Sequence record: OR699282.2
Length of the DNA stretch: 64,000 nucleotides
Direction: 5' to 3' (one strand)
The notes under the pieces were generated by a model. The model saw only the letters and a program-made list of their open reading frames with translations. It made no database searches and was not told the origin of the DNA. Positions within the stretch are counted from its first letter, which is position 1. Each line of letters begins with the position of its first letter. A program made the position numbers and the translations under genes. Shown here piece after piece: positions 37,244-42,447 of the stretch.

Positions 37244-39266
37244 ATGACAAATACTCTTAAGTACTACCTGAATACTCTAAATGAACTAGAGTACGGTGAG
37301 TTTCTCGCAGATAGTTCGTGGCTAATTGAGCTAAAAAATTATAATAGTCCAGGATGCACCCTTATGATGAACAATGCAATTGATACCCTCATAGTAAGCA
37401 TATTGCACAGCAACATCTGCGGGGATAGCAATAAACAATTATCAAAAATCTTAGTACTGCTATCTATATGAATATCGAACAGTACTACATCGATGCACTA
37501 CCAACAAAAGGTCTACGTGAAAGCCTACTGCATACACAAACTAATTTCAAACACCTCAAACGTAGCCCTAAACTCCTGAACTCGTACAGGAATAATAACA
37601 TAAGAAATGCTTTACAAGGGGTAGAATGTATGCAATACTATTACATCCTTACCCTATTAATCGAGTACTAATATGAATACTGAACATAAAGAATTCTACA
37701 CCAAATACCTTAGCAACGAAGAACAATTGTTTCTAAGGAGTGTATCACCTGTAAGTACCAATACTCAATTCGGTAGAGATTGCTTTAATAATTGTATACG
37801 TAGTACTCTAGAAGCAATCGAATGCAATAACAAAAATATTATGTACTCAGGTTTAATAGGACTAATATATTTCTATGAATAATCATAAAGATTTCTATTG
37901 TAGTAAACTACCCAAACAAGAACAGCTATCATTCTCTTTAGCACCACCTATGAGAAAGGATAATCTGTATTATAATTACGATTTCAGGATGGTGACACGT
38001 TATGCAATAGAACATCAGTTCCCTGAAACTAAGTACCGCTCTATCCTGAACCTCATCTTTAAGTTCTAAAAGGTACACCAGGGACCGAGTACTTTAATAT
38101 AGTAAGGCTAATTACATTATAATGAATCATATAAGCTACTACTACCAACAACTATCCGACAGAGACAAGTACAGTCACAACTCCCATGTGTGGTACTACA
38201 AACGCGGCAGTATAAGAGACAAACAACATTACTTCTGTATTTCTATTAAAGAAGCACTGACAACTAAGTACACGTACCGAGCAGTACTTAAACTTATTGA
38301 AATGTAAAGAGAATACTATGAACATTGAATTGTACTTAAGTAAATTACAGCCTGGCGATAGATTCATCTACAATAAGTTCGAATTCAACTACAAGAACGG
38401 GAGCAACAAATATCGTCGAGGATACCTATATACAAGCACAAGAGATGCACAAAACGAAAAGTACACATACAGAGAAGTACTTAAACTAATCTCTATTTGA
38501 GGTAATATATGAATACATTTGAGTACTATACCAATAAACTATCTATGCCTGAAAGATCTCATCTCTATGTGTGGAGAAATGCGTATAAAAGCGGCAATAA
38601 ACTTATACAAAGAAATTCCCTTACAGTGTGTACAAATTTAATTAAAGCAGAGTACCGCACATATATTGAAGTACTCAAACTGATAGCAATATAAGGTACT
38701 CTATGCAAGAATTCTATATCTATAACCTCCAGCACAAAGATAGATACAACTATAATAAATTCCAAAGGTACTACACAGTCGGGAACAAAAGAGATAAAAA
38801 ACGTTATCTACTCTCGTGTACAGTAGAAGCACAAAACGAAAAGTACACGTACAGAGAAGTACTTAAACTAATCTCAATCTAAGGTAGACATGAACACTTT
38901 TGAGTACTACTTCAATAAACTAAACCACATAGAACAAAGTATGCACTACACATTTATTCAGAACCATCAATCATCTTCACCTCTAATTAAAAACATATCG
39001 ATTGAGATTATAACTAACAGTGTACTGTCATCTGAACGTTATATGTATATTGATGTACTGAAACTCATCTCTATGTAAGGAATACTATGCAACAATTCTA
39101 TAGAGAACACATAAGCATTAAAGACCGTTTCATGTACGACACCTTCGTGAAGTACTACAAACTAGGAACAAAAAGTACTAAAAATATTAATCTCAATAGC
39201 TGCATTTATGCTGTACTAACACAAGATAATCCCTACAGGGAAATCATTGCCCTGGCATCTATATAA
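37244..39266 (+). other. micro-ORF paralog array, part 1 (10 CDS of 59-75 aa)
   Basis: 37244-37471, 37468-37671, 37673-37882, 37875-38069, 38122-38307, 38318-38500, 38509-38694, 38703-38882, 38890-39078, 39087-39266; MN..(E)YY..L start, Y..(V/I)L.LI end. Confidence 0.8.
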
Positions 39267-39276
39267 AGGAAACCAA

Positions 39277-39936
39277 ATGAAACTTAATCCACACAGCAAA
39301 CAATACCTTAAGCACTTTAAGTACCTCAACAGTATTCAAGCAGAATCTTTTACACCAACATATACTTACGACCCGTGTGTACTAAAGAAACGAAATAAAA
39401 AGAAAAAATCCAGAAATGTTCTCGTATCTAAGAACCTCAAATCGTACTTGAAGAAAAATAATATAGCTCTTGCTTTTATTAATATCTATAATACTGATTT
39501 AAAAGTATTGAGTACTAATACCAGCACAAAAGCACTAAAGAATGCATCTATCTATATACACATGGATAATATCCCGTGCACTATAATTCTATCTTTCGGG
39601 AATGTATACTTCTTCGGGAATTGTAATAGCACCCATGATATCAGTACTGCACAATTCCAAATCGGCGATATGTACTGCATGGGTTCAGAAAAAATACACG
39701 ATAACATGCACTTCTTCCAAAAGCAACGTACTAACGAAACTGATACAGTACTGCAATTCCTCAAAGAACTAGAACACAAAGAATTATCCGAGGAAGAAGA
39801 ATTCATGTACAGTACTGTAATCGATAATCCAGGACTCTATAAAAACGCGTACAAACTAACAAAACATGTACAGGAACTTATCAGTACTGATAAGAAATTT
39901 CATCACCTCATTACGTATATTTCAAACTATGTATAA
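39277..39936 (+). CDS. hypothetical protein, EE.F(Q/M).S(L/I) paralog family
   Basis: AAGGA RBS; SEEEEFMYSTVI. Confidence 0.75.
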   Translation: MKLNPHSKQYLKHFKYLNSIQAESFTPTYTYDPCVLKKRNKKKKSRNVLVSKNLKSYLKKNNIALAFINIYNTDLKVLSTNTSTKALKNASIYIHMDNIPCTIILSFGNVYFFGNCNSTHDISTAQFQIGDMYCMGSEKIHDNMHFFQKQRTNETDTVLQFLKELEHKELSEEEEFMYSTVIDNPGLYKNAYKLTKHVQELISTDKKFHHLITYISNYV

Positions 39937-42447
39937 AGAATACTACAAAGATAAAATCCCAATGCATCTACAACACCATATACCAAACGTTGCATTGGGT
40001 ATCAAAGATCACGCAAAGATAATGTTCCAACAATGTACTAAGTACACGCTCATATACGATGATAATCCATATATGCTGTACTACGTAGTAATGCTAACAT
40101 TCAGGTACTAATATGAATACTTATAAAGAATTCTACCTCTCGTACCTTAATTCCGATATAGTAACATCCAATACATTCAGTACTAAAATTATCTATAATG
40201 AAGTAATGAAAGAATGTATTAAAGGTGCTATTAACCCTAAAGATACGTATGACTTGTACTATGCAGTACTAACCCTTGTTTTCACGAAATAACACATAAT
40301 ATGAATAACCACAAAGAATACTACATAGAGAAACTCCCAATGTATCTACAACACCTTGTACCAACAGAACCATTGCGTATAGAAAAAGACTACGAAAAAG
40401 ACTATTTCATTAAGTGCACTAAATCCTCGATAGATATTGAGGACTATAATAGAGTACTGTATCACATCCTTTTACTAATATATAAGTACTAATATGAATA
40501 ACCACAAAGAATACTACATAGAGAAACTCCCAATGTATCTCCAGAGCCAGATACCAAACGTTGCATTGGGCATAAAAGATGACGCAAAAACAATGTTCCA
40601 AGAATGTACTAAGTACACCCTAATGTTCGAGGATAGAACATATAAACTGTACTACATCCTCGCCCTAATATTCAAGTACTAAAGAGAATAATATGAATAA
40701 CCACAAAGAATACTACATACAATTTCTCCCCAGTATATTTGAACACTACGCCAGATATAAAGTCCCCCTGGATAACGATTTGGCAGTACTGGGATTCAAT
40801 AATTGCATAGAACGAAGTATAGAAAATAGTAGTAGTTATGACCAGCTATATAACACTATCCTACTTATATTCAGGTACTAATGTGTATAAAGAATACTAC
40901 ATAAAAGATTTACCACCGCACCTTCAAGGTAATCTGTTAGAAGATGAACCTCGCGGTATAGAAATAAACTACGAAAAAGACTACTTTATTACGTGCACTA
41001 AATGCGTGATAAATTATTACAACTACAATCAAGTACTGTATCATACCCTGTACTTAGCATTCGTATTCTAAGAGAACAATATGCATAAAGAATACTACAC
41101 AAAATATTTCCCAATGTACCTCAGAACTAATCTATTAGATAAACCTCGCGGTATCAATGCTCAAAACGATAAAGTGTACTTTACTATGTGCACTAAAGCA
41201 TGTATACTAGATTTTGATAGCTATCATCGAGTACTGTATCATACCCTGTACCTAGCTTTCGTATTCTAAAAGAACAATATGCATAAAGAATTCTACTTAA
41301 GCCATCTCGATCTAAACTCCCAAATGCTTATACCACTAATCCCAATAGATATCAAGGATAAGAAAAATACCGAACAATTCATTTACCATACACAGTGTGC
41401 GATCACCCCAAATTACATTCCATATGAATTGTACTACATTCTCGCCCTAATATATAGGTACTAATATGCATAGAGAATACTACACACAATTTGTTAAAGG
41501 GAACTACAAACATGCCGTACCCAGAACCCCTTTAAATTTTCATGACCCAAGTACTATATTCTTGTTCCATGACGCAATACGTACAGTACTCAATACTAAA
41601 GATGAAGATGTGCAGTACGTATTCTTACTATTACTTATATACAGACACTAACTAATATGAATAAAGAACATAAAGAATTCTACTCCAAATACATAAGCCC
41701 CTCAGAACAAATGTTTCTAAGGACTACAGCACCTTTAAGTACTAATACATTTTTCGGCAGAGTATGCTACAATAATTGTATTCAAATGACTTTAAACGCA
41801 AACGAAGATGGTAACAGTACTAACCTGTACTCAGGTATCATAGGTATACTATTCCTGTATGAATAATTACAAAGACTTCTATTTGAATACACTACCTACT
41901 GTACTTTCTCTAAGTGCTCAATGTAAAATCCCCCTGGATAATGCTTACGCCAGATATAGCTATTCCATAACTGTTAATCGATGTATAGAGAATCATTGCA
42001 GTACTAACCAGTACTATAACATAATCCTACTTATATTCAGGTACTAATATGAATAAAGAACATAAAGAATTCTATATACGAAAACTAACATTCGTCCCCG
42101 TAAGAATATATAAAGAATGCGACCCAAGATTATACCTATGGCACTTCAATGAGTGCATAAAAGATTCTATATACCCTAAGAACTATAAAGAACAATTGTG
42201 CTCAGTACTAACACTAGTACTATCATATTAATTAATAGAGAATACTATGCATAAAGAGTATAAAAACTTCTATATAAGTAAACTAAAAGAAAATGAACAA
42301 GTATGGATTAGATCTATAATTCCACTGGCATTTAATAGATATGCATTTAACAGATGTACCGAGATTGCTATAGACCCTTATAATATTAAAGAGAATGTAC
42401 AGTATAATCAGTACTACTATATCTTAATGCTTATATATAGAAAGTAA
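39929..42447 (+). other. micro-ORF paralog array, part 2 (13 CDS of 59-69 aa)
   Basis: 39929-40111, 40113-40292, 40301-40492, 40494-40682, 40693-40881, 40883-41071, 41081-41269, 41279-41464, 41466-41651, 41657-41866, 41859-42047, 42049-42231, 42247-42447; M(NN)HKE(Y/F)Y..C...Y.IL.LI(Y/F)(R/K)Y. Confidence 0.85.

What the first reader, a model, noticed from the sequence alone, without database searches (positions are those of the whole stretch)
37244..42447. Operon of 23 paralogous ~60-aa micro-proteins
Seen: 23 tightly coupled ORFs share an M(NN)HKE(Y/F)Y..L N-terminus, a variable middle, often a central Cys, and a Y.(I/V)L.LI..Y C-terminal helix. Sub-families are recent duplicates (39929/40494; 40301/40883/41081; 37673/41657; 40693/41859; 38318/38703). 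Many junctions read (A/G)GTACTAATATG, fusing last codons, stop, SD and next start. They sit under one visible sigma70 promoter. Inference: a constant helical scaffold with a hypervariable face, like an expanding library of inhibitors of host defence proteins.
Basis: partly seen in the sequence, partly recalled or inferred. Interest (0 to 1): 0.66.

Follow-up and report, generated by a model that had tools for sequence, protein, structure and literature searches.

The report
Paralogous micro-protein operon, jumbo phage
A giant E. coli phage carries one tightly packed operon of 23 tiny genes (about 60 codons each), at least 21 of them diverged copies of a single small helical protein that exists only in this phage genus; they look like early-infection effector proteins, but their targets are unknown.

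Summary
The window is the right end of Escherichia phage BAU.Micro_ELP-22, a 373-kb Asteriusvirus jumbo phage. Positions 37244-42447 hold 23 small ORFs (59-75 aa) and one unrelated 219-aa ORF, with only 165 non-coding bases.

Twenty-one ORFs fall into two distantly related subfamilies: B (15 copies, PHROG 11711, function unknown) and A (6 copies). One more ORF is a probable member and one is marginal.

AlphaFold2 predicts compact helical bundles with confidence (pLDDT 89 and 94). No informative match was found in structure or sequence libraries.

The family is confined to Asteriusvirus: 33 clusters among 1.84 billion proteins, always at this locus. Copy number ranges from 13 to 21 in seven genomes. 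All 117 copies are intact. Orthologues evolve under purifying selection (pN/pS 0.3-0.5, against 0.22 in neighbouring genes). Some paralogues are recombination mosaics.

A sigma70-type promoter is conserved in all seven genomes. The operon ends 275 bp before the 21.3-kb right terminal repeat. No member appears in two published virion proteomes.

My best reading is an early-expressed, expanding and contracting family of small binding proteins for host takeover or counter-defence. The anti-defence role itself is untested. This scan held no earlier report of this array.

The parts
37190..37218 (+). sigma70-type promoter of the operon: TTGACA, 17-nt spacer holding CAGTACTG, then TACTAT. An AAGGAG Shine-Dalgarno sequence follows at 37231-37236.
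   Evidence: Both hexamers and the SD are conserved in seven Asteriusvirus genomes, including the divergent JNE01.
37244..37471 (+). m01, 75 aa, acidic. A marginal, very divergent family member.
   Evidence: hhalign against the family profile is collinear, E 0.0025, probability 12%. BLASTP to m09 gives E 1e-3.
37468..37671 (+). m02, 67 aa. A probable divergent member. Its start overlaps the m01 stop by 4 nt.
   Evidence: The combined family HMM gives E 4e-6 over its full length.
37673..38069 (+). m03 (37673-37882, 69 aa) and m04 (37875-38069, 64 aa). A subfamily-B two-gene unit with an 8-nt overlap. It is duplicated as m21/m22.
   Evidence: (m03/m21 59% identity, E 2e-31; m04/m22 36%, E 7e-12).
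38122..39266 (+). Subfamily-A block, six genes: m05 38122-38307, m06 38318-38500, m07 38509-38694, m08 38703-38882, m09 38890-39078, m10 39087-39266. They have 59-62 aa and are mostly basic (pI 9.2-9.6).
   Evidence: The AlphaFold2 model of m08 has pLDDT 93.6 with four helices.
39277..39936 (+). m11, 219 aa (phrog_29152, function unknown). Not a family member. It is single-copy, always embedded in the array, and carries four CAGTACTG words in its 3' half.
39929..42447 (+). Subfamily-B block, 13 genes: m12 39929-40111, m13 40113-40292, m14 40301-40492, m15 40494-40682, m16 40693-40881, m17 40883-41071 (GTG start), m18 41081-41269, m19 41279-41464, m20 41466-41651, m21 41657-41866, m22 41859-42047, m23 42049-42231, m24 42247-42447.
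   Evidence: The AlphaFold2 model of m14 has pLDDT 88.7. m15 and m17 are mosaics of neighbouring paralogues.
42722..64000 (.). Right copy of the 21,279-bp direct terminal repeat. This is context, not part of the operon. The array ends 275 bp before it.
   Evidence: Record positions 1-21279 equal 352210-373488 at 100% identity. A repeat of about 21 kb was confirmed experimentally in the related phage fEgEco12 (PMC13070987).

Best explanation
SHOWN. The locus is a single, tightly coupled operon at the right end of the unique region of an Asteriusvirus jumbo phage. It encodes a genus-restricted multigene family of about 7-kDa soluble, tyrosine-rich helical-bundle proteins in two old subfamilies. 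The array grows, shrinks and reshuffles: copy number is 13-21, and some genes are mosaics joined within the conserved 5' and 3' gene ends. Each retained paralogue is kept under purifying selection.

INFERRED. The host RNA polymerase transcribes the operon early, from the conserved sigma70-type promoter, as a continuation of the early small-gene region in the adjacent terminal repeat. The conserved N-terminal helix, the F..CT face of helix 3 and the C-terminal helix form the core of a fixed mini-scaffold. The divergent loop and helix surfaces give each paralogue its own binding specificity. The proteins would then act as small stoichiometric binders of different host macromolecules, or those of a competitor, during takeover or counter-defence. 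Which paralogues a phage carries would tune the strains it can exploit.

ODDS. Paralogous coding family in one operon: about 0.95. Early expression: about 0.7. Binder or effector role: about 0.5. Specifically anti-defence: about 0.3.
For: Family and operon.

Coding status: all 117 copies are intact in seven genomes. Pooled orthologue pN/pS is 0.27-0.52; by column class it is 0.33 (core) and 0.46 (variable).

Faster protein evolution than neighbours: pN/pS 0.50 against 0.22 for ELP-22 versus BF17.

Hotspot: in JNE01 the flanking genes are 96-100% identical in protein sequence, while array genes are 26-58% identical. There are 39 clusters at 75% identity; 10 are present in all six closely related genomes.

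Mosaics.

Fold.

Solubility and composition: negative GRAVY, 8-16% Tyr, no long hydrophobic stretch.

Genus restriction. The family is absent at the syntenic junction of GAP32.

Early expression: the sigma70-type promoter is conserved. The same promoter style, with CAGTACTG in the spacer, recurs in the terminal repeat. The T4-like late motif TATAAATA is absent from the array. In the related phage CBB, RpoD-like promoters cluster on short hypothetical genes next to and inside the terminal repeat, which the authors read as early host-takeover genes (PMC5259590).

Not virion proteins: absent from the phAPEC6 (62 proteins) and JP4 (49 proteins) virion proteomes.

Precedent: phages amplify anti-defence loci under selection (PMC13096335 and PMC9391042, listed).
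Against: There is no direct evidence of transcription, translation or timing. The wastewater metatranscriptome contigs cover the array and its flanks alike, and could be DNA.

The proteins resemble no known anti-defence or host-takeover protein, in sequence or fold.

No column class shows pN/pS above 1 among orthologues, so no arms-race signature is detectable at that level.

A promoter match is only a consensus match. The region as a whole has no more promoter-like sites than shuffled sequence.
Confidence: 0.5

Rival explanations
1. Virion-packaged internal proteins, analogous to the polymorphic T4 IPI/IPII/IPIII genes. The conserved N-terminus would act as a capsid-targeting sequence, and the proteins would be injected with the DNA.
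For: T4 IPII and IPIII begin MKTYQEFIAE. Member m13 begins MNTYKEFYLS, which is 5 of 10 identical, including positions 4 and 7. Those are the positions reported to matter for targeting (PMC9026906).

T-even ip genes are likewise tandem and poorly conserved apart from this peptide.

Asteriusvirus heads contain an inner body of unknown composition and a T4-type prohead protease (PMC7247149).

Subfamily A is basic. The neighbouring RCC1-like paralogues are virion proteins.
Against: The proteins were not found among 62 virion proteins of phAPEC6, a list that includes a 4.7-kDa protein, nor among 49 of JP4.

The processing positions 8 and 10 (I..E) are not conserved.

The N-terminal residues are modelled as a helix that is part of the fold.

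Only a sigma70-type promoter is seen, with no late TATAAATA motif.

The resemblance covers about six residues and could be chance.
Confidence: 0.08
2. Assembly chaperones, adaptors or regulators of the divergently transcribed RCC1-like virion proteins. That array (11-12 paralogues) starts 103 bp upstream on the other strand.
For: The two arrays are adjacent and divergent, share one intergenic region, and are both expanded only in Asteriusvirus. GAP32 has one RCC1-like gene and no micro-protein. The RCC1-like proteins are in the virion.
Against: Copy numbers do not track each other. ELP-22 has 21 micro-proteins with 14 RCC1-domain matches; 121Q has 14 with 16 matches (matches are not exact gene counts).

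Between ELP-22 and JNE01, one RCC1-like gene is 96% identical in protein sequence, while every array member is below 60%.

The promoter type suggests different timing.

The complex prediction could not be run.
Confidence: 0.1
3. Small phage-internal regulators, for example DNA- or RNA-polymerase-binding helical proteins. They would control phage transcription or replication, possibly through the very abundant CAGTACTG word.
For: Their size and all-helical fold fit small regulators. Subfamily A is basic. CAGTACTG is about 60-fold over-represented and sits in promoter spacers, including this operon's promoter.
Against: No helix-turn-helix or other DNA-binding family or fold was detected. Subfamily B ranges from acidic to basic. 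Fifteen to 21 variably present paralogues are hard to reconcile with core regulation. Presence/absence polymorphism among close relatives fits accessory roles better.
Confidence: 0.1
4. Largely functionless remnants of a gene accordion. A past amplification of one useful gene left diverging, dispensable copies.
For: Constraint is relaxed relative to neighbours (pN/pS 0.50 against 0.22). Some pairs have dN roughly equal to dS, such as m09 and m17. Whole genes are frequently lost.
Against: None of the 117 copies in seven genomes has a frameshift or premature stop. Pooled pN/pS is well below 1 in both core and variable columns. Ten orthogroups are retained in all six close genomes. Start codons, SD-like sequences and stop-start coupling are kept.
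Confidence: 0.07

Closest known systems
PHROG 11711 (phage orthologous group, function unknown)
   Same: All nine subfamily-B members tested match its 62-position profile end to end (E 1.6e-6 to 2.7e-27).
   Different: The PHROG carries no function. The one subfamily-A member tested (m07) and m01 do not match it. No paper found describes the family.
T4-type internal head proteins (IPI, IPII, IPIII) and their polymorphic loci
   Same: Both are tandem, fast-diverging small genes sharing a conserved N-terminal peptide. The peptide itself is similar (MKTYQEFIAE against MNTYKEFYLS). T4 IPI is a known injected anti-restriction protein (own knowledge).
   Different: The cleavage positions are not conserved. 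The C-terminus is also conserved here, and the N-terminus is part of the predicted fold. The proteins are absent from two virion proteomes. No late promoter is seen.
Early host-takeover gene clusters in or next to long terminal repeats (T5 pre-early genes, SPO1 host-takeover module, Kayvirus terminal-repeat genes; CBB early region)
   Same: Many very small genes lie behind sigma70-type promoters, at or beside a long direct terminal repeat (PMC5259590).
   Different: As far as I know, those clusters consist of unrelated genes. Here 21-23 genes are copies of one fold.
Multigene families and 'gene accordions' of large DNA viruses (poxvirus K3L amplification, ASFV MGF families; segmental amplification of anti-defence loci in T4/T6)
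   Same: Both are tandem paralogue arrays near genome ends that vary in copy number among close relatives. Amplification of counter-defence loci is documented in T-even phages (PMC13096335, PMC9391042).
   Different: The known phage cases are recent, near-identical laboratory amplifications. This array is old, at 15-65% identity between copies, with each copy conserved. Its target is unknown.
Small three-helix-bundle binders (e.g. designed mini-binders; AcrIF23 appears at low Z)
   Same: Size and generic up-down helical topology. The VIA lists include designed binders and an anti-CRISPR at Z 3.3-5.8.
   Different: The Z-scores are far below the level that indicates relatedness for helical bundles. 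This is a resemblance in shape only.

Membership tests
PHROG 11711 | Significant full-length match to the family HMM | tested here: met
   nine tested B members match with E 1.6e-6 to 2.7e-27 over profile positions 1-62.
PHROG 11711 | The same match for subfamily A and m01 | tested here: not met
   m07 (38509) and m01 (37244) have no PHROG hit at E up to 0.01. A is linked to B only by profile-profile comparison.
T4-type internal head proteins (CTS-bearing) | N-terminal 10-residue capsid-targeting sequence resembling MKTYQEFIAE | tested here: inconclusive
   up to 5 of 10 identical (m13). The family consensus is MNNHKEYY..
T4-type internal head proteins (CTS-bearing) | Prohead-protease cleavage determinants at CTS positions 8 and 10 (I..E) | tested here: not met
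   position 10 is E in only a few members, and position 8 is Y in all.
T4-type internal head proteins (CTS-bearing) | Presence in purified virions | tested here: not met
   Published proteomes of phAPEC6 and JP4 list none. Very small proteins may be under-sampled.
Any Pfam / NCBI-type curated family | HMM match above the curated threshold | tested here: not met
   no Pfam hit above its cut-off; no PDB sequence relative (best E 1.1).
Known anti-defence protein families (Acr, Ocr, Tad, Gad and others) | Sequence or fold match to a characterised member | tested here: not met
   No dedicated anti-defence HMM library was available. Foldseek against PDB and BFVD, and VIA across the PDB, gave no meaningful match. 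PADLOC, which holds defence proteins, gave none.
Early (host-RNAP-dependent) phage genes | Transcribed from a sigma70 promoter in the first minutes of infection | not testable with these tools
   A conserved consensus promoter is present. No infection transcriptome of an Asteriusvirus was available, and the metatranscriptome contigs were inconclusive.

The most novel reading that the evidence does not exclude
The array is a natural, evolvable library of about 7-kDa mini-binders on one helical scaffold. Each paralogue would neutralise a different host immune or housekeeping protein. New specificities would arise by unequal crossing-over within the conserved 5' and 3' gene ends. Array content would then be a main determinant of which E. 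coli and Salmonella strains an Asteriusvirus can infect.
Probability: 0.25. Interest if true: 0.8.

Novelty: new variant of a known kind. Interest (0 to 1): 0.55.

Why it matters
Paralogue arrays this large, of one micro-protein in one operon, appear unusual in phages. No paper found in these searches describes one.

If the members are target-specific binders, the locus would provide about 40 natural variants of one minimal scaffold (39 clusters at 75% identity in only seven genomes). These could be screened against defence systems and host factors. It would also be a phage counterpart of the terminal multigene families of poxviruses and ASFV, and a marker for host-range differences among therapeutic jumbo coliphages.

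Even without a known function, the genes should be annotated consistently. Several deposited records miss half of them: BF17, for example, has 12 annotated features under the match where HMM scans find 19 family members.

Tried and rejected
- Pfam, PADLOC and PDB-sequence profile searches gave nothing.
- The ESM Atlas gave no usable hit.
- Foldseek against the PDB had a best E of 3.3. BFVD returned only family members.
- VIA searches across the PDB had a best Z of 4.4 (B model) and 6.1 (A model). These are generic helical repeats and are not informative.
- The profile search of 1.84 billion proteins found only Asteriusvirus members, plus one spurious 531-aa repeat protein.
- The 219-aa gene was considered as a family member carrying an insertion. 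This was rejected.
- A membrane or tail-anchored peptide was rejected. The C-terminal hydrophobic stretch is only about 10 residues and GRAVY is negative.
- Positive selection on the variable columns was not seen.
- Co-variation of RCC1-like and micro-protein copy numbers was not seen.
- Wastewater metatranscriptome contigs (four runs, one study) cover pieces of the array, its flanks and the ORF-free region alike. They therefore prove neither transcription nor its absence. Their joints between paralogues may be natural variants or assembly chimeras.
No result was obtained.
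Full report
IDENTITY OF THE WINDOW

The array region is 100% identical to Escherichia phage BAU.Micro_ELP-22 (OR699282.2, 373,488 bp, genus Asteriusvirus). Window position equals record position minus 309,488. All of its genes are annotated 'hypothetical protein'.

The record carries a 21,279-bp direct terminal repeat: record 1-21279 equals 352210-373488 at 100% identity. The right copy begins at window position 42722, which is 275 bp after the last array gene. A repeat of about 21 kb was confirmed by PhageTerm and restriction digests in the related phage fEgEco12 (PMC13070987).

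Upstream, on the minus strand, lies an array of RCC1-like beta-propeller paralogues (24300-37140). Their homologues are virion proteins in phAPEC6 and JP4 (PMC7247149 Table 1; PMC12648861 supplement).

THE OBSERVATION

The + strand of 37244-42447 holds 24 ORFs: 23 of 59-75 aa and one of 219 aa. Spacing is extremely tight:
- three 8-nt overlaps;
- one 4-nt overlap;
- seven 1-nt gaps;
- all other gaps at most 15 nt, except one of 52 nt before m05;
- 165 non-coding bases in total.

Six junctions read GTACTAAT(A/G)TG. This is R/K-Y-stop followed one base later by the next start codon.

BLASTP all-against-all, alignments and HMMs define two subfamilies:
- Subfamily B has 15 genes: m03, m04 and m12-m24. 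It corresponds to PHROG 11711.
- Subfamily A has 6 genes: m05-m10.

The two are collinear and related at profile level (hhalign E 6e-5, probability 66%). m02 joins a combined HMM at E 4e-6. m01 is marginal. The 219-aa gene m11 (phrog_29152) is unrelated. No further copy exists anywhere else in the 373-kb genome.

The duplicates are 47-64% identical in protein sequence, so they are not very recent.

THE PROTEINS

The proteins are soluble (negative GRAVY) and unusually rich in tyrosine (5-10 Tyr per protein). They usually have one central Cys. Subfamily A is basic; subfamily B ranges from pI 5 to 9.4.

AlphaFold2 gives confident models:
- m14 (B): pLDDT 88.7, pTM 0.74, helices at 3-10, 14-17, 30-45 and 49-62.
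- m08 (A): pLDDT 93.6, helices at 2-7, 11-26, 29-43 and 49-58.

Conserved positions are the N-terminal K-E-Y-Y..L, the F36/C39/T40/I44 face of helix 3 (periodicity test P = 0.03) and most of the C-terminal helix. The variable parts are residues 13-35 and 45-52.

No sequence or structure library gives an informative relative.

DISTRIBUTION AND EVOLUTION

tblastn finds the family in 36 phage records, all of them Asteriusvirus coliphages or Salmonella phages. The word-indexed search found 53 proteins. The exhaustive profile search of 1.84 billion representatives found only 33 clusters. The most divergent of these lie in the same syntenic array. At the equivalent junction of Cronobacter phage GAP32 there is one RCC1-like gene and no family member.

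In seven genomes the array holds 13-21 members (B 11-15, A 2-6), and all 117 are intact. At 75% identity these form 39 clusters. Ten are shared by the six closely related genomes. ELP-22 has two unique genes. JNE01 shares no cluster with the others.

Between ELP-22 and JNE01, flanking genes are 96-100% identical in protein sequence, while array genes are only 26-58% identical. The locus is therefore a diversity hotspot, or a swapped cassette.

The ELP-22-specific genes are mosaics:
- The first ~60 nt of m15 are identical to m14, and its middle is 83-90% identical to m12.
- m17 combines an m14-like middle with an m18-like 3' end.
- m06 and m08 share a 93-96% identical 3' end.

Recombination within the conserved gene ends is thus the likely engine of gain, loss and shuffling. 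The unit m03-m04 was duplicated as m21-m22, keeping its 8-nt overlap.

Orthologue pN/pS is 0.27-0.52, against 0.22 for 12 neighbouring genes in the same genome pair. Split by column class it is 0.33 (core) and 0.46 (variable), and no class exceeds 1. The genes are therefore real, moderately constrained coding sequences. The variability lies between paralogues.

EXPRESSION

The promoter TTGACA-N17-TACTAT, followed by AAGGAG, is conserved in all seven genomes. Its spacer carries CAGTACTG. This palindrome occurs 66 times in the window against 1.1 expected. It sits in the spacer of many consensus sigma70-type promoters, several of them in the terminal repeat.

The T4-like late motif TATAAATA occurs only twice in the window (15 expected), and neither copy is near the array.

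In the related phage CBB, RpoD-like promoters cluster on short hypothetical genes next to and inside the terminal repeat. The authors read these as early takeover genes (PMC5259590).

Early, host-polymerase-dependent expression is therefore a reasonable inference, but no data show it. The only RNA libraries that held the sequence were wastewater metatranscriptomes kept as contigs. They cover the array, the RCC1-like gene and the ORF-free region alike.

FUNCTION

The best-supported reading is an early operon of small soluble binding proteins on one scaffold. It would be an accessory, fast-turnover module of the kind associated with host takeover and counter-defence. A specifically anti-defence role remains a hypothesis.

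Four rivals were considered:

(a) T4-like injected internal proteins. I verified that T4 IPII and IPIII begin MKTYQEFIAE, which resembles MNTYKEFYLS of m13. However, the cleavage positions are not conserved, the N-terminus is part of the fold, and two virion proteomes lack the proteins.

(b) Partners of the RCC1-like virion proteins. The arrays are adjacent, and both are expanded only in this genus. Copy numbers and divergence do not track each other.

(c) Internal regulators. No DNA-binding signature was found.

(d) Decaying accordion remnants. The intactness of all 117 copies and pN/pS below 1 argue against this.

NOVELTY

The genes are deposited and grouped in a PHROG, but they are unannotated, and no paper found in these searches describes them. 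[quoted passage not shown]

Conceptually, the locus is a new variant of two known kinds. One is the early small-gene cluster at a terminal repeat. The other is the multigene family or gene accordion of large DNA viruses.

LIMITS

- No infection transcriptome exists.
- Seven of the 36 genomes were analysed in detail.

Noticed in passing
whole window; e.g. 787, 15102, 37202, 43101, 48169, 55048, 56678, 62807: The palindrome CAGTACTG occurs 66 times against 1.1 expected (8.3 under an order-3 Markov model). GTAC is 3-fold and AGTACT 14-fold above base-composition expectation. A subset sits exactly in the spacer of consensus sigma70-type promoters (TTGACA-N8/9-CAGTACTG-TATAAT). This may be a binding site for a phage or host factor, or a promoter-class signature.
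   Followed up: partly
window 42448-44400: An ORF-poor stretch of about 1.95 kb spans the start of the right terminal repeat (42722). It holds 12 CAGTACTG copies (6.1 per kb), iteron-like GGCTAAACGGCTAGAT repeats at 43480-43630, repeated ATTTTGGGCGTA words and a perfect consensus promoter at 43087-43114. It may be an origin, packaging or regulatory hub.
   Followed up: no
window 42722-64000: The record contains both copies of a 21,279-bp direct terminal repeat. Everything in the window from 42722 onward is duplicated at the left end of the genome.
   Followed up: yes
window 39642-39889 (inside the 219-aa gene 39277-39936): Four CAGTACTG words lie within 250 bp in the 3' half of the only non-family gene of the operon, just upstream of the subfamily-B block. 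They may mark an internal promoter or regulatory site. The gene is single-copy, occurs as alleles of about 95-100%, about 70% and about 36% identity, and is internally truncated in the Salmonella phages.
   Followed up: partly
window 9313 and 9961: The T4-type late-promoter word TATAAATA is strongly depleted (2 copies against 15 expected). Both copies sit just upstream of ORFs (9357-9740 and 9987-11264; the record lists a 'virion structural protein' among the features of this region). This is consistent with a T4-like late promoter in this genus.
   Followed up: partly
window 24300-37140 (- strand): An array of RCC1-like beta-propeller paralogues shares an N-terminal peptide (MLPF(A/P)RM...). 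Homologues were detected in purified virions of phAPEC6 and JP4. Some copies in ELP-22 and 121Q contain in-frame stops in the six-frame search.
   Followed up: partly
L003 (phage JNE01) against window 34757-47925: Identity is sharply mosaic. An RCC1-like gene and several terminal-repeat genes are 96-100% identical in protein sequence between JNE01 and ELP-22. The micro-protein operon between them is 26-58% identical. This suggests cassette exchange or strongly accelerated divergence confined to the operon.
   Followed up: partly
window 37882-41285, 40684-41468, 41862-42251 (joints in metatranscriptome contigs): Wastewater contigs join distant paralogues, skipping 3.4 kb, 0.8 kb and 0.4 kb. These are either natural shorter array variants or assembly chimeras across repeated gene ends.
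   Followed up: no
L004 (BF17), L005 (slurp01), other records: Many deposited Asteriusvirus annotations miss a third to a half of the micro-protein genes. BF17, for example, has 12 annotated features under the match where HMM scans find 19 intact family members.
   Followed up: partly
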